From: Iphione sp. A-MEVVRFRX5
Lineage: Eukaryota
Reading direction: 5' to 3'
Assembly: GCA_976226885.1 (NCBI GenBank)
Contig: OZ320321.1
Span: 11,346,001-11,410,000, forward strand
Length of the DNA stretch: 64,000 bases
Below the pieces are notes generated by a model, which was not told the DNA's origin, made no database searches, and saw only the letters and a list, made by a program, of their open reading frames with translations. Position 1 is the first letter of the stretch. Every line of letters starts with the position of its first letter. The position numbers and the translations under genes were made by a program. Of this stretch, positions 14,217 to 23,978 are shown piece after piece.

Positions 14217-14243
14217 CTGGCCACCAGTACAGTGTCCAAAGAC

Positions 14244-16053
14244 ATGAAGCGGCAATTTGATGAGCCACAGCTAGCATCCCTCAGCCTCATCCCCAGTAGT
14301 CCCCACACGTCCATCCAGTCGTCGCCCTGTAAGCGCCTCAACCCGGTCAGTGTCAGCGTCAACCGACGCTTTTCCAAGAAGCCGCGACTGGGAGGTTACG
14401 ACGAGACCTCCTTCTGTGCCGACGACCTCCTCTCCGGCCCCGAGCCCTTCGCCTTCAACGGCGTCGCGCTTTGCGCCAGTTTCGCCGAGAGTACCGGCCA
14501 CCTGCACCATCAGGCGCAGCACGGCGTCGTCGGCGGCTGCGACGGCGGCGACTTCTTCTCCACCGGCGTCGGCGGCGGAGACGGCGGCGGAGGCGGCGGT
14601 GGAGGCGGCGGAGGCGGCATCACCGGCGCCGAGGTCGAGACGTACGACCGCAGCGGCGAGCGCGGCCTCTCCCCTCCCGCGCCGGCGGCGACGGCGCCAC
14701 GCGCGCCTCAGCGGCAGGAAGTGAGCCCAGCCGCTCCCCCCGCCCCCGAGCAGCAACACCTGCGCCACCAGGGGTCGCAGCAGGTGGCGCCCCAGCAGCC
14801 GCGCCCGGCGAGCGAGGCTCCGCAGCAGAAGGAGGTGGACTCGACCACCTCCTCCAAGACCAGCCTCATCAACAACAATAACAATAACAACAACGTTACC
14901 AACCACAACCCCCCGACGACGGCGGCGGCCCCCACCACCGCCACCACCGGCAGCACCACCGCAGCGACGATGAGGTCCAAACCGGAGCCCGAGCGGCTGA
15001 TCGCCGAGACCAAGATGGACCTTGACCTGGAGGACGAGCGGTCGCTGAGCGGCGGGGGCGGCGAGTCGCCCGAGCCGCCCATGAGCCGTCCTTTCCCCTG
15101 CATCTGGCTCGACCGCTCGCAGGAGCCCACCATTTGCAAAGACCCGCCGCCCGAGGCCATCAAGAGCCACAACCTCCACGACGTCATGGTCACCAGCAGC
15201 GACATGCGCAACGGCTCGGACGGCGTGGCCCACGAGACCGGAAGTCAGCCCAGCGACGACGAGATGCGCCACACGCCGCAGCCGTCCCATCCGCTCGACG
15301 GCTCGAACGTGTCGGTCGTGGCGGCGGCGGCCGCAGCGGCGGCGGCGGAAGCGCAGCACCGCGCCGCCATGGAGCACTCCATGCACCAGATGCTGGAGCG
15401 GTCTCACCTGGAGCGCGGCCAGATGGAGCGCGCCCAACTCCAGCATTCCCCACAGCACCAACAGCAACAACAACACCAACAACAACAGTCCCAACAACAA
15501 CAACAGCAGCAACAACAACAGCAACAACACCACCAGCAACAGCTGCAACAACAGCAGCAGCAGTCGTCGCCGCACCACCCGTCTCTGTCCATGCACGGGC
15601 CCGGCGGTCACCCACCCCCGCCGCACCCGCAGCAGCGCTCGCCGCACCGCGACCAGCCGCACCACGGCGACCAACCGCTGCACCCGCAGCCCCCGCCGCC
15701 GCCCCACCAGCCCGGAGGGCCGCACCCGCAGCAGCAGCAGCCGCCGCCGCAACCCAACGGCTTCCCGCCCTTGAAGGAGGGGCTGACCCCGTCGCCGCTG
15801 AAGAACGGCCTCTCCCCGCACCACCACTTCAACGGGCTGCCGCCAGAGGGCACGACGGTGGTGGGGCCGGACGGCGAGCAGCTCACGCTGGAGGTGTGCC
15901 CCGAGTGCAACAAGGTCTTCAAGCGGCGCGTCTACCTGCAGCGCCACATGGAGCGCGAGCACTGGTCGACGGCCAAGGTCTTCAAGTGTAGTGACTGTTC
16001 CTACGAGACCAAGCACCAAAGCAACCTGTCCGTACACCGTCGAATCCACACAG
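14244..16053 (+). CDS. Zinc-finger gene, first coding exon (603 codons + 1 nt; fingers 1 and 2 at its 3' end)
   Basis: Strong acceptor ttttttgtctctttacag ends at 14165. ATG at 14244 (gacATGa) is the first ATG after an in-frame TAA at 14214-14216. Donor ag|gtgagc at 16054. ORF track 14232..16136. Confidence 0.88.
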
Positions 16054-19000
16054 GTGAGCAGCCCCCTACTTCTACTCCTCCACAGCCCGCGAGTAACTCC
16101 CCACCTTTACCTATGACTACATATTTACCACAGTAAACTTAGTTAGGTGTGTGCGGCGGACAAACATGCTCAGTTCCTCGCATCGCCTTAACGATTCCCC
16201 TGGTAATTATACTCATTCCTTTTGGAAGTTCGAAATTGACGCCTCTCATCACTGTATGCTTTCGTTTGTAATTGGTCGTTGATTTGTTGTCGGCCGTATA
16301 CCACCAGTGTAAAAAAAACGAGCGTAATGGCCGCATTCAGATTATTAAATTTAGGAAGGGAGGGCTAATTTCACGGCCCCGTGAGCTCATCGGCCTTTTT
16401 GGCAATCGGGCGGCGTTTGTGTTTATAGTTTACGACGCTGTCTCGGCAGCAAAGCCCTCAGTGTGTCCTTAAGCTGCCAGGAAGTGCCGAGCATTGATGG
16501 CGCCCCCGTCAGTGGAAGAAAGGGCGCCAATGGCGGCGTATTCCTCGCCTCGGCACTTGATTGATTGCTCGCTTGTCCCCCGCAAGTTTCGCTGAAAATT
16601 CTTTTGAATCTGGCGCGGCGGCGGCGGCGGCGGCGGTGGCGGCGGCGCCGATCAGATAACGATGCGGACGTATGTGTGAAAAATCCGCCATTAATCTCTA
16701 TCTTTGCGAGGAGCAGAGCAGAGAGTGCGAGTGGCAGAGGACTTCTTTACCTCGGCCTGGCCCGGCACCTCGTCTCCCGGCTGTGATGGAGAGCATTTGC
16801 GTATTTAATATGCTGTCGCCTGACAAAGGAAACCTCCTCGGCCTCGTATGCTCACTAATTTGACAGCCTATTCTTCATAACACACACACTCACACATACA
16901 CATACAAACTGAGGGTGATGTGATCCACAGGAATTGGCTTTCCTAGCTTAAATTTGAAGATTTGTGTTTACCTTAGCCCCGTCAGCAGTGCAGCCTACGT
17001 CAAACAGTCATGAGGCACGCGGTTCAAACAGAAGTAGCATGCCTAATGTTCAGTCAGGACCTCCTGCTTCTGCTCCTCCTGTTCCTCCCTCCCNNNNNNN
17101 NNNNNNNNNNNNNNNNNNNNNNNNNNNNNNNNNNNNNNNNNNNNNNNNNNNNNNNNNNNNNNNNNNNNNNNNNNNNNNNNNNNNNNNNNNNNNNNNNNNN
17201 NNNNNNNNNNNNNNNNNNNNNNNNNNNNNNNNNNNNNNNNNNNNNNNNNNNNNNNNNNNNNNNNNNNNNNNNNNNNNNNNNNNNNNNNNNNNNNATACAG
17301 TCATCGCCCTCTGTCTTCTCTATCATCATACAGCTAGCACAGACACACAGTTTACACGCCGACTCACGCCAGTTGCAGACTGGAGTTGTTATTTACTCTG
17401 GCAGTCCCTTACTCTACAATGGTCAGTAACAAAAGATTAGGCTACGCTGCAGGTGCACTCGCGTTATGTCCCTGACAGCAGTAACAACGGTGTATGATAT
17501 TCCTCCCGTTCACAGAAACGAAGCACCTTTTTCTTACCGGGATGGGCGGCACATTAAAACTTCATTGGCTTTCAGCCTTTCTATTCCTAAACGTGCTATG
17601 TAAGTGCAGGCTTCGTCCCAGGCGTCACATCAATTCTTCACCCAAATGGAATTAAAGCCAGGCCAGCTCAAAAAAAAGGAGGACAATTGGAGAAAACGTG
17701 TTTGAAGCATGAGGTGCCTCCCCTGAGTCTAGGTCTCTGTTACTTTAAATGGTTTAGCCATGAATGTAACTGGATTAGCCTTAAATATAAATGACTTAAC
17801 GACGAGTAAAAACTGGCGCAACCCCCCCCCCCCCTGCCATTCCCTTCCACCCACCCCCACCCCCATTAAAAGCATTGAGTGCCTTACTCTGCTTAGAACA
17901 TAGACTATGTGCTTCTTCTGGGGAAACAAATGATACGAAAGGAATTCTTTTAATTTCCCCTCTCCAGTTGTCGCCAAGAAAGGGTACATCGGTGGCAAAT
18001 TTGATTCATCATTGAGCAGCTTGTAGCGTATTTTCACCAGCAGGGCTAGAAAGCACATATCTATAGTGGAGGCCTCCTTCATTTCACCGGCGAGGCAAAA
18101 ACAGAATCCATTCCCAGGCAAGCTCTGCAAACAATACGCCAAAACAATTAAATTATTATGCGCGTAAAAGAAGGGGGCCTATATTAATTATTAAATCTTG
18201 CTGAAGAAGCTGGGGTCTATATTATTAGTTCCCAAGCGAAGTAATTGCATTCAGTCGTGGTCGCTACGCAACAATCGCGTCAGGACTGTTTTTTTTGTGT
18301 AGATTGAACATTTCTTTTTGGCGCACTCATCCTTTACGCGGGAGGAATCATACTTAAAGTTAGTCCCGCGCGCGTTGCGGGGGTGAATACATCAATACTT
18401 GTTGGCGGCTTTTTAGTCGGGCGCGATTCTACAGTTTTGCAATTAGGCGCGTCGGTCGGCAGGCACTGTATGTTTGCCTGAACGATGTACCTCATTAGAG
18501 GGTCCGCTACCTACTCATTCCTTAAACATGATTAAGACAAGCTTTTTCTGGCAGAACCCCCTACAGGAGTGCTCCGCCTTTTCCTTCCCCGGCCGACGAC
18601 GCCACACAACAAACAAGGCTCCCGCCCGCATGTGGATTTGCATATTTTTACTTCTGTAACGTATCACTACCGAGTAGTGTAGCTTGTGGTGGTGGTGGTG
18701 GGTTGGGAGTGGGGGTGATGCTGCACTGGGGGTGTACGCTTGCTCAGAGAAATCCTCTGTTTTTTTGACAAATTAACGCCGATGAAATGGCCAGTGTGGG
18801 AATACAGAAGCGCCGCCTTCCGTGCCTAACAAACATGCACTTTCGTCGTCCAACTTCCCGGCCGGCGGCCGAGCAGGAGGAGCACTCCTTTGATTACTCA
18901 CCGCAACTGTCTTCCTTAATAAGGCAGACTAGCCTATCGCGCAGGCCACAAAGCAGCGGCAAAAAAACGCCCGCCGAGTAGTCCCTTCCTGTAATGTACC

Positions 19001-19401: not shown

Positions 19402-22400
19402 TTGGTAAGGAAGCGCTGTAGAAAACACACATAGACACAACACGCACGCACACACGCACGCACATACACACGCAGAGCAAAACCGCAACAATTGGCGCCG
19501 CCGCCGCCGCCATCGCCGCCTGAGCAGCAAGAGGAAGAGGCGGGGATGGAGTGAAGGGGCCCGGAGCACGCGGTGCCGGGGTCCCGCGCACCCTAATGTA
19601 TTCTTTAGAAAGGTGAGACCATTTCGTGGCGCCAGCCAGCATGTAGCAGGCGCCTGACGCTTGACGTTTGACGCCAGTGACGCTCCCTCCCTTGACGTGC
19701 CACTCTCGCGTCGAGCCACACGCGACGCGTCCAACAACCCCCTCCCTCCCCCCTCCCCCCGCCCTTTCCTGCGCTTTGTAGCGGGCGATGAATGGTGGCC
19801 GGACGACCGGCGGCGGGCCGCTACAGCGCGTTATTGGCTGATTGTTGACAGAGGATCGGCGCTCCGCGGTCGTCGAGCGGCGACGGCGGATGTGGAAAGG
19901 GTGTCCTGCCTTTCCGCCAGGCGGAACGTGATTGGTTGGGGGTGGTTTGTAGAGGCTTGAGGGCGGCGGCGGCGGCCTTCTCGGGGGAGGAGGAGGAGGA
20001 GGCCTGCAAGGAGCCAGTCTTGTTCCTTAAGCTGCTGCCTTGGTTGCTGCGGCTCTACATCAAACGCGTTATTGATGTCACTTGACCTGCTGTGCCGCCC
20101 CCTCCCACCCTGCCGGCGGGCGGGCGGGCGGGCGGGCTGTACGGCGGGGGAGTTGGCTGGTGTGGAGAGTGGGGCGGTGGCCTGCAGATCGGCGGGGCTC
20201 GTGGACAGCTTGAACCTAGCACCTCCTCTGACCTGGAGAGGACCCACGTGGGACCTGGCCTAGCCGCCTGGCCGCCCGTGCAGGAGAAGCAGCAGCAGCA
20301 GCAGTATCCACTGAGGAATCCGACCGACCAAAAAGTACACACGCTGCGCGGATATGGGGGGAGGGGGGTCATGCAAAGAAAAACCCAAGAACAAGCAATC
20401 AAGATCATTACCTTTTTAGACACGTCTCGGCAAAGAAAGCTCAGTAGGTGATAGAATGGGAGAACGTTTTGTTCCGTAGTCGACCCTTTTTTTCCCCTAT
20501 AAGAGCGCCATGTACGAGGGAGTTGCTCCCAAGGCCTGACTGGGTCCACTGGCTGCCGGCTTTTATTGTTTTGTGTTTTTTTGGTTAATATCAATTTCAT
20601 CGGGCGTTGTTGTATGGATGGTGATATCGGACTATCTGTACTGCCTGAGCTGACAAGGCCTACCGCCACCAGCAATCAACAAGGAGGGGGGGGGGAGCTG
20701 GTAGCGAGAGATTTACATACACACACCGCCCCCCGCTCTCCTTGTCTGCTGGCAGCGTGCTTAAAGAAGCCGTCAGGTCTCTCTTAAACACCCACCGTCA
20801 CATATAAAGCTGACTGCCTCGGCTTTTTCTCGCCGCCATGCTTATAATTGCTCATCTCAACTTAAAGTATCAAAGGTGCGTTTTTATGAGGGCCCGTTGT
20901 CTCGCTTCCTTTTACAGTATGCAATCGGACTCCCCCGGACCTTTTTTTCCCCCTCGCCGTTTCATCATTAGGGCCCTCAGAGAAATCTATTGCGATGAGA
21001 GAGACATTATATTACCCTAGAGTTTTTTTTCCTTGCACTTGCTATGTGAAACCATTATTTTTAGGCACTAAAAAGGGACTTAATACCAAACGAAGCTAAT
21101 TAAATTTGTCGTGCATTTTAAATGTCCCTTTTTTTCTGACGCTTTTATGGAAATTCCCACTGTACATATGCATTTGATTCCTAGGGATTTCATTGTCCTG
21201 CTCGCTCATGGAAGCACCTAACTGGATTGATTCCATTTACACAAATTAATCTCCATTCCAATTCATTCTCGGCATTTTCCTATTCACTAAAAGATTACTT
21301 TTTTCAGGCCATGCAAATGGGAGGCACTAAAGATATATTTTTTCCCTTAAGAGAGCTAATGGTATATGCATGTACTCTTTTTCCCCCTTTCAATCGCTTA
21401 ATATAACCTTGGTAAAGCACAGAGTGGCTTCATGAGACATGGACGAGTTCCATCATACCCCTCCCCCCCTCCCCCCCCCCCGCCCCATAGGTTCTTGTCG
21501 TCTTCCTGCAGCGACCGTCAGAGTCCTCAGTTTGATCGTTCCAACCTTGTGTTTAGACTGTGTACATTCCTGTGTGTCGTCCCACCAACCCCTTTACTAC
21601 CACAACCAACATGGCTTCCCCACTTCTTACGATCGCACTGCCTCTCACTCAGCCACCCCCACCCCCTCTAGCCTTCCCCTTCGTGCTCCTCCTTCTCTTC
21701 CTCCCTGCTCTTCTTCCTCCACCATCTCCTCNNNNNNNNNNNNNNNNNNNNNNNNNNNNNNNNNNNNNNNNNNNNNNNNNNNNNNNNNNNNNNNNNNNNN
21801 NNNNNNNNNNNNNNNNNNNNNNNNNNNNNNNNNNNNNNNNNNNNNNNNNNNNNNNNNNNNNNNNNNNNNNNNNNNNNNNNNNNNNNNNNNNNNNNNNNNN
21901 NNNNNNNNNNNNNNNNNNNNNNNNNNNNNNNNNNNNNNNNNNNNNNNNNNNNNNNNNNNNNNNNNNNNNNNNNNNNNNNNNNNNNNNNNNNNNNNNNNNN
22001 NNNNNNNNNNNNNNNNNNNNNNNNNNNNNNNNNNNNNNNNNNNNTCTCGAATCTTCATTGGAATCTTTTGTTTTCCAGGCGAGCGCCCATACAACTGCGG
22101 AGCGTGCGGCCAAACGTACACTCAGGGTCACCTCCTCAAGTCTCACATCCGGAGTCGGCACGGAGGTAACATGGAGTACTACAACCTGGACAAGAGCAAC
22201 AGTACGTCATCTCCCCACTAACCAACCAACCCCCTCCCCAGTCGACAGCCCTGGCTGTCCAGCCCCCGTTACCAACAACAACAAAGACCGCTATTAGACC
22301 GCTTCTATTCCAGGCCGAAGCCAAAATAAATTCCTAACCCTTTTTTCAACTTTTCGGCTTTTTATATATACTTTTTTTGGTTTTATCGTTAGTCTATTTC

Positions 22401-23978
22401 TTGGTGACTTCAACAACCATGGCCCCCATCCCCACCTCTTCGTTCCATTTGCTCTTAACTGCATTTGATTGTTAATGTGGAATTCTGTCGCAGGCTGGAC
22501 GCGCAATGCTCCTTTGTCTCCGCAAAATTGACATTCGCAGTGATTTTTTTTCTATTCAAACGAAACTCGAAACTGGATTCGTTTGGTTTCGTAGGGATTT
22601 GATCTTTTTTTTTGTTAGCACCAAGAGTGTGGTGACAGTAATGTAAGTGTGGCTCAGGTGTGGCCGTGGATTGATGGTCGGGTTCTGTTTTTTTGCTCCC
22701 GTTTGCTGTCTAGGTGAGCGGCCCTACCACTGCGGAGCCTGCGGCCAGCGCTACACGCAGGGCCACCTGCTCAAGTCGCACATCCGCAGCCGCCACGAGG
22801 GCAACATGGAGTTCTACAACCTCGACAAGAAGGGCGAGAGCACGCGCGGCCGCAAGTCGCTCGACCCCAAGCACGACCCGGCGGCCATGATGCAGCAGAA
22901 GCAGGACAAAATCAACTCGCTGGTGGCGCAGATCGAGCGCCAGAAGATGTCCCAGATGATGGGCGGTGGCGCCGCGCCCAACATGGCCTCCTTCCTGGGC
23001 GCCAACATCCCGCCCTACATGAACGCGCTGCGGCCCTTCATGGCGTCGCCGCTGGCGCTCGGCACGGGCCTCCTCGGCGGGCCGCGCCTCTTCGCCATCG
23101 GCAACATGCAGAACATGGGCGACAGCATGATCCCGCTGCCGGCCGGCCTGCCCATGCTCGGGCACGGCGCGCCCGGTCTGGGCATGGAGGGCGCCGGCGC
23201 CGGGGGCATCAAGGTGCCGCTCAAAGTTCCCGAGGTGCCCAGCCCCATCAGCTTCCACGAGAGCGGCGCCAACGGCGGCGGCGGCAGCGGCGGCGGTGGC
23301 CCCAAGATCACCGTCATCGACGACGCGCTACCGCAGGACCTGACCACCAAGAAGACCCCGCCCCTCAAGAGTCCGCCTCTGCGCAGCCCCACGGCCGCCA
23401 AGAGTCCGTCGTCGGTGCTGCGCGAAGTGAACGGCGCGCCACCCACCAGCTTGGCCGGCGGCGGCTGCTACAGCAGCAAACTCTTCCCGGGCTTCGGTCG
23501 CGGCGGCGGCTCGCTCGCCGACGATATGGACGACATCGGCGCCGCCAAGGGCCACTTCCACCCGGCGGGCGCGTCGCCGACCTCGACGACGGAAGAGGCG
23601 GTGCGCGACATGAAGGAGATGAAGGAGGAGATCCCGCCACCGCGCATGCTCGAGGAGAGGAAGGTCCTTCCGGCCGGCGCGGGGGGCGCCGGCGGCGGCA
23701 TGGGGGCGACGACGGCGGAGTCCAAGCCGATGGACTTCACGTGCAGCAACGGCCCGGCCGGCGGCGGCGGCGGTCACCACGCCGTCAAGAACTGCGACCA
23801 CGCGCTGAAGCTGCGCGCCCTGCGCAAGAACATCGTGCGCATGCTGAGCGTGCTGACGCCCGACCTGGGCGTGGAGAACACGCTCGACTACGACAGCGAC
23901 CAGGTGGACGAGCTGCTGCACGAGGTCATCTACAGCAACATCGAGGAGGAGGAGCAGCAGTCAGCCGTCAAGACCTGA
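14244..23978 (+). CDS. C2H2 zinc-finger transcription factor, long isoform: join(14244..16053,22714..23978), 1024 aa, three fingers, polyQ/polyA/Pro-rich regions
   Basis: Fingers CPECNKVFKRRVYLQRHMEREH, CSDCSYETKHQSNLSVHRRIH and CGACGQRYTQGHLLKSHIRSRH. The canonical HTGERPY linker is rebuilt exactly across a phase-1 intron (CACACAG|gtgag ... ctgtctag|GTGAGCGG). Codons are strongly GC3-rich. Joined length 3075 nt is a multiple of 3 and ends in TGA. Orthologue not recognised; N-gaps in the intron could hide extra exons. Confidence 0.9.
21732..22044. other. Assembly gap (N run); other gaps at 105-288, 17094-17294, 32254-32406, 36699-36888, 55097-55240 and 63595-63833
   Basis: Runs of n, mostly next to low-complexity tracts. 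This gap ends 34 nt before the exon A acceptor. Confidence 0.99.
22079..22221 (+). CDS. Zinc-finger gene, alternative exon A (paralogous finger 3, short terminal exon: GERPYNCGACGQTYTQGHLLKSHIRSRHGGNMEYYNLDKSNSTSSPH*)
   Basis: Acceptor cttttgttttccag ends at 22078, in the same phase (1) as exon B. 35/39 aa are identical to exon B, with 14 synonymous codon differences. TAA at 22219-22221 and AATAAA at 22325. An internal donor-like a|gtacgt lies at 22202. Confidence 0.75.
22325..22330 (+). terminator. Candidate polyadenylation signal for the short (exon A) isoform
   Basis: AATAAA lies about 100 nt after the exon A stop. A T-rich downstream stretch follows (ttttttcaacttttcggctttttatatatactttttttgg). 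Confidence 0.5.
22714..23978 (+). CDS. Zinc-finger gene, terminal exon B (finger 3 plus ~380-aa tail with PQDLT/PMDFT motifs and a C-terminal helical module)
   Basis: Acceptor tttttttgctcccgtttgctgtctag ends at 22713. The frame is open to TGA at 23976-23978 (ORF track 22647..23978), with high GC3. Confidence 0.9.

What the first reader, a model, noticed from the sequence alone, without database searches (positions are those of the whole stretch)
23802..23930. Zinc-finger TF carries a MORC3-like C-terminal module
Seen in sequence: after a long low-complexity tail, the protein ends in an ordered amphipathic segment, ALKLRALRKNIVRMLSVLTPDLGVENTLDYDSDQVDELLHEVI. From memory (not database-checked), the extreme C-terminus of human MORC3/NXP2 reads [42 protein letters not shown]. 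By hand this gives 19 identities in 43 columns with one gap, including LKLRxLRxN, PDL and YDxDxVDExL. Established: MORC proteins are GHKL-ATPase chromatin compactors and silencers, and their C-terminal coiled-coil region contributes to self-association. Here the module sits on a sequence-specific C2H2 protein with no ATPase or CW domain in the exons I can see. Inference: it may be an oligomerisation domain, or an adaptor that hetero-oligomerises with a MORC ATPase and targets it to specific DNA sites. I know of no described TF of this architecture.
Basis: partly seen in the sequence, partly recalled or inferred. Interest (0 to 1): 0.85.

Follow-up and report, generated by a model that had tools for sequence, protein, structure and literature searches.

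The report
MORC-type tail on zinc-finger repressor
A three-finger DNA-binding protein of this invertebrate ends in a short two-helix module that also closes MORC3/4-type chromatin ATPases; it probably makes proteins pair up, and I found no entry for it in the domain and structure libraries searched.

Summary
Window 23802-23930 (+) encodes the quoted 43 residues, near the end of the last exon (22714-23978) of a three-finger C2H2 gene.

The homology claim is supported:
- A profile of the module from 10 orthologues, searched against 1.84 billion proteins, found 100 hits. They include an amphioxus MORC (E 9.6e-6) and turtle MORC4 (E 8e-4).
- The reverse profile, built only from MORC tails, hits only this ORF in the window (42.5 bits).
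- hhalign gives 98.8% probability.
- A shape search puts a MORC3 cluster first.

The module is a terminal helix-loop-helix that follows MORC's coiled coil. No Pfam family or solved structure matched it.

It occurs in three architectures: this transcription factor, MORC3/4-type ATPases, and long disordered proteins with two tandem copies. The tandem pair is predicted to fold as one compact four-helix unit (pTM 0.74). I therefore read the module as a pairing (dimerisation) unit.

The factor also carries a CtBP-type motif, PQDLTTKK, which suggests a repressor.

Recruitment of MORC is possible but untested. No protostome MORC with the module was found.

The scan had already noted the duplicated finger-3 exon on this window.

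The parts
23793..23939 (+). C-terminal module: invariant Cys, helix 1 (HALKLRALRKNIVRMLSVL), loop TPDLGVENTLDYDSD, helix 2 (QVDELLHEVIYSN). Homologous to the extreme C-terminus of MORC3/4-type ATPases.
23802..23930 (+).
22714..23978 (+). Last coding exon. Acceptor AG at 22712-13, phase 1. It encodes finger 3, the low-complexity tail and the module. Stop TGA at 23976-78.
   Evidence: orthologues P0001, P0006, P0009 begin the same way
22731..22796 (+). C2H2 zinc finger 3 (CGACGQRYTQGHLLKSHIRSRH).
23331..23345 (+). PQDLT, followed by TKK: a CtBP-type P-x-D-L-S/T-x-K/R co-repressor motif.
   Evidence: kept in 37 of 71 hits of at least 200 residues outside the MORC and tandem families. CtBP binding itself is inferred from established knowledge of the motif.
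14232..16053 (+). Large upstream coding exon with fingers 1 (15897-15962) and 2 (15981-16049). Donor G|GTGAGC after 16053. The true 5' end and start codon are not determined.
22079..22221 (+). Duplicated finger-3 exon with the same acceptor phase, ending in a stop (TAA 22219-21). It would give a short isoform without the tail and the module.
   Evidence: scan note s1-320310

Best explanation
**Shown:**
- The gene encodes a three-finger C2H2 protein conserved in protostomes. Named hits are molluscs, an annelid and an orthonectid. The window's closest relatives are unnamed.
- Its last ~50 residues form a conserved helix-loop-helix module with the signature L..LR.N(V/I)..(M/L)L.(V/L)..P.L, then a loop, then D.VD.LL..V(I/L)..N.
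- This module is homologous to the extreme C-terminus of MORC3/4-type GHKL ATPases of chordates. There it follows the coiled coil.
- It is also homologous to both halves of a tandem pair that ends a third family of long disordered proteins.

**Inferred:**
- The module is a pairing unit. Two hairpins pack into a four-helix bundle, as the natural tandem pair is predicted to do within one chain. A protein with a single copy, like this one, would then be a dimer through its tail.
- For the transcription factor this would double the three-finger DNA-binding surface, for paired or bridged sites. It would also double the CtBP-type repression motif in the tail.
- An isoform made with the duplicated finger-3 exon would lack both the motif and the module. 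It could compete for sites as a monomer.
- Pairing with another protein that carries the module remains possible.
For: **Homology**
- Profile A1 hits the amphioxus protein P0088 at 41.5 bits, E 9.6e-6. Its cluster mate P0106 has HATPase_c_3, Morc6_S5 and zf-CW.
- A1 also hits 'microrchidia 4' P0100 at E 8.2e-4.
- MORC4 of turtles, a crocodile, birds, monotremes and marsupials all end in the module.
- hhalign of A1 against A2: 98.8%, E 1.2e-16, 50 columns.
- BLASTP against the amphioxus MORC: 44% identity over 50 residues.
- Reverse profile: 42.5 bits, the only hit among 1343 six-frame pieces of the window.
- Shape search: the top row is a MORC3 cluster, TM 0.65 over 61 residues.

**Conservation**
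- 26 invariant columns across 10 orthologues.
- About 80 of the 100 hits are neither MORC nor tandem-family. Those carrying Pfam hits or a finger-3 motif are this transcription factor; many are last-exon fragments.

**Pairing**
- The single module is modelled as two helices with middling confidence (pLDDT 67, pTM 0.44).
- The natural tandem pair is modelled as four helices with pLDDT 82 and pTM 0.74, from an alignment of similar depth.

**Repressor**
- The PQDLTTKK motif is conserved.
Against:
- Packing of the tandem pair is inferred from pTM and pLDDT only. I could not inspect the coordinates.
- The published MORC3 dimerisation maps to the 'coiled-coil' region in general, not to these last 50 residues.
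- The helices are not significantly amphipathic by hydrophobic moment.
- No RNA run was listed, so use of the exon in this species is not shown directly.
- MORC3 itself was not tested with a tool-derived sequence.
Confidence: 0.6

Rival explanations
1. MORC adaptor. The module pairs heterotypically with the same module on the species' own MORC3/4-type ATPase. The sequence-specific factor would thereby bring the chromatin-compacting ATPase to its DNA sites.
For: The core positions are shared between the factor's modules and MORC modules. In a weakly resolved tree the two classes group together, apart from the tandem family. The tandem family shows that two non-identical modules can pack together. 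A scan note says this genome has a MORC-family gene (unchecked).
Against: All MORCs found with the module are chordates, while the named hits of the factor are protostomes. No protostome MORC is among the 100 hits, although amphioxus MORC scored well above threshold. The C-terminus of this species' MORC is unknown. A metagenome scan found no further MORC.
Confidence: 0.17
2. Docking module for a common third partner. The hairpin does not self-associate. It binds one conserved nuclear protein, for example a nuclear-body or matrix component, which all three families need.
For: The module always sits at the extreme C-terminus after long disordered linkers, as many short docking domains do. The solvent-facing acidic residues D.VD.LL and the LR.N motif are as conserved as the core.
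Against: The tandem pair is predicted to fold on itself with high confidence, which a pure ligand-binding hairpin need not do. No candidate partner emerges from any search.
Confidence: 0.18
3. Chance resemblance of two generic helical, leucine-rich tails, with no common origin.
For: The module is short (about 50 residues) and helical. Shape matches of short helical hairpins mean little on their own (note).
Against: The profile hits are significant in both directions at a library size of 1.84 billion. hhalign gives 98.8%. The best shuffle scores 13.6 bits against 47.5 for the real module. The matches are in the same position, at the extreme C-terminus, in all three families.
Confidence: 0.02

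Closest known systems
C-terminal end of MORC3/MORC4-type GHKL ATPases (MORC4 of sauropsids, monotremes and marsupials; an amphioxus MORC)
   Same: The same ~50-residue helix-loop-helix module at the extreme C-terminus. Identity is 36-44%, with the shared signature L..LR.N...L....P.L ... D.VD.LL..V..N.
   Different: The window's protein has no GHKL ATPase, S5 or CW domain and no long coiled coil before the module. It has three C2H2 fingers and a CtBP-type motif instead. It adds a Cys...Cys-x-His stretch before helix 1, which MORCs lack.
Tandem-module family: unnamed long disordered proteins such as Liolophura sinensis XP_064617139, P0082-P0101
   Same: Both of their C-terminal halves match the module profile. 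Some members also have N-terminal C2H2 fingers.
   Different: They carry two copies in one chain, and the first copy is divergent (L..LR..V..LF.VLFP.L.YP..F). They have extra motifs, F..EF.KFLQQ and KYNLRPK, and a C-K-x-P-x-x-C stretch before the second copy. They lack the three-finger block.
Zinc-finger factors with a dedicated dimerisation domain (SCAN, BTB/POZ, arthropod ZAD)
   Same: They work alike in principle: a small protein-protein module attached to a C2H2 array that sets homo- or hetero-dimer partners. This is established knowledge of those families; the analogy is my inference.
   Different: There is no sequence relationship. Pfam finds none of these domains. Those domains are N-terminal, whereas this module is C-terminal. 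None of them is shared with an ATPase.
CtBP-dependent short-range repressors (Knirps, Krueppel and Snail type, with the P-x-D-L-S-x-K/R motif)
   Same: PQDLTTKK fits the motif and is conserved in the arthropod-like orthologues.
   Different: Binding was not tested. The mollusc-like branch of the family lacks the motif.

Membership tests
MORC (microrchidia) ATPase family | N-terminal GHKL ATPase domain (Pfam HATPase_c_3) | tested here: not met
   Pfam scan of both coding exons finds none. The full-length orthologue P0004 (564 aa) carries only C2H2 families. Genuine MORCs P0106 and P0108-P0126 do carry it.
MORC (microrchidia) ATPase family | S5-fold domain (Morc6_S5) and, in animals, a CW-type zinc finger | tested here: not met
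   Absent from the window's exons and from the orthologues. Present in P0105 and P0106.
MORC3/4-type C-terminal tail module (no Pfam entry found) | Significant profile match in both directions | tested here: met
   A1 to MORC: 41.5 bits, E 9.6e-6, and 35.3 bits, E 8.2e-4. A2 to the window: 42.5 bits, E 5.4e-6 at Z of 1.84e9. hhalign 98.8%.
MORC3/4-type C-terminal tail module (no Pfam entry found) | Position at the extreme C-terminus and a two-helix hairpin | tested here: met
   The conserved module ends 12 residues before the stop codon. The AF2 model has helices 7-30 and 46-67. The shape search puts a MORC3 cluster first.
MORC3/4-type C-terminal tail module (no Pfam entry found) | Match to MORC3 proper | tested here: inconclusive
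ESM Atlas rows named MORC3 appear. No tool-derived MORC3 sequence was obtained.
C2H2 zinc-finger transcription factors | C2H2 fingers recognised by Pfam | tested here: met
   zf-C2H2 at E 2.9e-10 and zf-C2H2_16 for fingers 1 and 2. Finger 3 matches weakly, below the cut-off, but has the full C-x2-C-x12-H-x4-H pattern.
CtBP-binding repressors | P-x-D-L-S/T motif followed by a basic residue, and binding to CtBP | tested here: inconclusive
   The motif is present and conserved in 37 of 71 hits of at least 200 residues outside the MORC and tandem families. Binding cannot be tested with these tools.
SCAN / BTB / ZAD zinc-finger dimerisation domains | Pfam domain match | tested here: not met
   None was reported for either exon at E up to 1.

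The most novel reading that the evidence does not exclude
The tail module is a heterotypic 'handshake' domain that defines a small network of chromatin proteins. Through it, sequence-specific zinc-finger factors (this family, and the finger-bearing members of the tandem family) would recruit MORC3/4-type ATPases to defined DNA sites. That would give MORC a sequence-guided targeting route distinct from histone-mark reading by its CW domain.
Probability: 0.15. Interest if true: 0.85.

Novelty: new variant of a known kind. Interest (0 to 1): 0.62.

Why it matters
How MORC3 and MORC4 are assembled and targeted beyond their ATPase-CW cassette is poorly understood. One recent paper states that MORC4's function 'remains poorly understood' (PMC13562400). 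Another describes the MORC3 C-terminal region as mostly disordered (PMC6614601).

This result does three things:
- It defines a discrete, conserved, foldable unit at the very end of these ATPases.
- It shows that the unit moves between protein families.
- It supplies natural 'controls': a tandem version, and a transcription factor that also has a module-less isoform.

That makes the function of the MORC tail directly testable, by dimer assays, partner swaps and deletion.

It also gives a first functional handle on an uncharacterised, widely conserved invertebrate zinc-finger factor: a likely CtBP-dependent, dimeric repressor. In addition, the module would merit an entry of its own in the domain databases.

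Tried and rejected
- **Pfam on the module and both exons:** no family covers the module.
- **ESM Atlas feature search**, with the module and with the amphioxus MORC tail: no usable hit.
- **PDB sequence profiles (A1, A2):** only chance hits at E above 1.
- **Foldseek and VIA-align against PDB,** for both models: nothing above the background for helical bundles, best Z 5.0.
- **Word-indexed protein search from the window and from P0004:** found only orthologues, because of its length window and word requirement.
- **RNA runs:** none was listed.
- **Metagenome scan.** The narrower one returned only a known orthologue of the factor.
- **Hydrophobic-moment test:** amphipathicity not above shuffles.
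- **Module tree:** 53 columns. Only the separation of the tandem family's first copy is well supported.
- **Literature searches:** I found no description of the shared tail.
- **Rejected readings:**
  - The module is not MORC's coiled coil; it follows it.
  - The Cys/His residues before helix 1 are not a proven zinc site, because the His is not invariant.

Full report
**What is in the sequence**

They lie near the end of ORF 22647-23978, whose stop codon is TGA at 23976-78.

The gene model follows from splice signals and from a full-length orthologue:
- A large exon ends at 16053 with the donor G|GTGAGC. It carries C2H2 fingers 1 and 2.
- The last exon starts at 22714, after AG at 22712-13, in the matching phase. 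It encodes finger 3, about 330 residues of low-complexity tail, and the module.
- The 564-residue orthologue P0004, which a source labels 'uncharacterized C2H2 Zn-finger protein', has the same order: three fingers, tail, module. Its finger block is 95% identical.
- Pfam finds no GHKL, S5 or CW domain in either exon, and no family for the module.

**Conservation**

Nine relatives found by word search keep the module at 59-98% identity. Twenty-six columns are invariant. The conserved unit runs from an invariant Cys (23793) to the Tyr-Ser-Asn (YSN) that ends the second helix (23939).

**The test of the MORC claim**

I searched the ten-sequence module profile (A1) against 1.84 billion representative proteins. 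It gave 100 hits at E up to 0.001. They fall into three architectures.

1. *The transcription factor.* About 80 of the hits are neither MORC nor tandem-family. Those with Pfam hits or a recognisable finger 3 are orthologues of this three-finger factor, and many of the rest are last-exon fragments. The named ones come from molluscs (Bulinus, Elysia), an annelid (Owenia) and an orthonectid (Intoshia).

2. *A tandem family.* Thirteen long, mostly disordered proteins end in two tandem copies of the module. One is an uncharacterised chiton protein, and some have N-terminal C2H2 fingers.

3. *Genuine MORCs.*
   - P0088 scores 41.5 bits, E 9.6e-6. It is from amphioxus. Its 90% cluster mate P0106 (1112 aa) has HATPase_c_3, Morc6_S5 and zf-CW.
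   - P0100 scores E 8.2e-4. It is 'microrchidia 4' of a turtle. Its cluster mate P0105 is MORC4 of Dermochelys.
   - P0093 scores E 2e-4.

A search from the turtle tail then showed that MORC4 of turtles, a crocodile, birds, monotremes and marsupials all end in this module.

Further comparisons agree:
- Profile against profile gives 98.8% probability, E 1.2e-16, over 50 columns.
- BLASTP of the window's module against the amphioxus MORC tail gives 44% identity over 50 residues.
- A profile built only from MORC tails, run against all 1343 six-frame pieces of the window, hits only this ORF. It scores 42.5 bits, E 5.4e-6 even at the size of the large library.
- Two thousand shuffles of the module reach at most 13.6 bits, against 47.5 for the real sequence.

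**MORC3 proper**

I could not obtain a MORC3 sequence from a tool. It scores 31.7 bits against A1, which is just under the reporting threshold of the large search. It scores 55.5 bits against the MORC4 profile.

[quoted passage not shown] The tandem model finds a MORC3-like cluster in second place. Shape matches of short hairpins are weak evidence on their own, but these agree with the sequence result.

**What the module is**

AlphaFold2 models the single module as two helices (7-30 and 46-67) joined by the P-D-L loop, at middling confidence: pLDDT 67, pTM 0.44.

In MORC4 and the amphioxus MORC the module follows the long coiled coil. It is therefore a separate terminal unit, not 'the coiled coil'.

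No solved structure matches it by sequence or by fold. The Pfam annotations stored for the MORC hits list no family for it.

The signature shared by all classes is L..LR..h..hL.hh.P.L.h...h......VD.hL..Vh, where h is hydrophobic.

**How it probably works**

The tandem family is a natural experiment. With an alignment of similar depth, its two copies are modelled as one four-helix unit with pLDDT 82 and pTM 0.74. I take this to mean that two hairpins pack against each other. A protein with one copy would then pair through it.

This fits the published report that MORC3 homodimerises through its C-terminal region (review PMC8627505). That work does not map the effect to these residues.

I could not inspect coordinates or run a multimer model, so pairing is inference, not observation.

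The tail of the factor also holds PQDLTTKK (23331-23345). This fits the P-x-D-L-S/T-x-K/R motif of CtBP-dependent repressors. It is kept in 37 of the 71 hits of at least 200 residues outside the MORC and tandem families. Together these suggest a dimeric, CtBP-recruiting repressor.

**The adaptor idea**

Heterotypic pairing with a MORC tail is compatible with the shared core. It also fits a weakly resolved tree that groups the factor's modules and the MORC modules together.

The evidence against it is indirect. Every MORC found with the module is a chordate. The named hits of the factor are protostomes. No protostome MORC appeared among the hits, although the amphioxus MORC scored well above the threshold. 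A metagenome scan added none.

A scan note says that this genome has a MORC-family gene. Its C-terminus is unknown to me.

**Comparison with known families and novelty**

The protein is not a MORC, because all three defining domains are absent. It shares only the tail.

Functionally it resembles zinc-finger factors that carry a dimerisation domain (SCAN, BTB, ZAD), but it is unrelated to them in sequence.

I found no paper that describes this shared tail. I found no Pfam entry for it. I therefore rate it a new variant of a known kind: a transcription factor with an oligomerisation module, where the module is an uncatalogued one borrowed from, or lent to, a chromatin ATPase.

**Limits**

- No RNA run was listed for this exon.
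- The species was not identified.
- The factor could not be matched to a named gene of a model organism.

Noticed in passing
window 22079-22221 (+): A second copy of the finger-3 exon, with the same acceptor phase: GERPYNCGACGQTYTQGHLLKSHIRSRHGGNMEYYNLDKSNSTSSPH, then a stop. Used as a terminal exon it would give a three-finger protein without the tail, the CtBP motif and the module. A GTACGT at about 22202 could instead act as a donor. The distant orthologue locus L001 has only one finger-3 exon. The scan already noted this feature (s1-320310).
   Followed up: partly
window 23331-23345 (+): PQDLT followed by TKK, a CtBP-type co-repressor motif. It is conserved in the arthropod-like orthologues (37 of 71 hits of at least 200 residues outside the MORC and tandem families) but absent from the mollusc-like branch.
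   Followed up: partly
window 23742-23801 (+): A Cys ... Cys-x-His stretch just before helix 1 (here C-x16-C-D-H; in most orthologues C-x3-7-C-x-H). The second Cys is invariant and the His nearly so. MORC tails lack it. The tandem family has C-K-x-P-x-x-C at the same place. Its function is unknown: a helix cap, a zinc site or a redox site are all open.
   Followed up: no
proteins P0074, P0082-P0087, P0091, P0092, P0095, P0096, P0098, P0101 (not in the window): An unnamed family of long disordered proteins ending in two tandem modules. They share further motifs: F..EF.KFLQQ and KYNLRPK(R)K. Some have N-terminal C2H2 fingers. One named member is Liolophura sinensis XP_064617139.
   Followed up: partly
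window 22800-23260 (+): Islands in the 'low-complexity' tail are conserved across orthologues: YNLDKK..STRGRKSLD, QKQ.KINSLVAQ.E.QK, LRP.MASP.AL and GIKVPLKVPE. These are likely further short linear motifs.
   Followed up: no
window 52105-52527 (-) and 57986-58630: An exon typical of an SLC17-type transporter on the minus strand (… LAPRYASILVAISTAVGTVGAIVMPIITGELT …). The scan has a note (s1-320394) on a tandem repeat near one of its splice acceptors.
   Followed up: no
window 21730-22044, 17090-17300 and other runs of N: Assembly gaps or masked stretches lie in the long intron between the finger-2 exon and the finger-3 exons. They were left as they are, so any small exon hidden there would be missed.
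   Followed up: no
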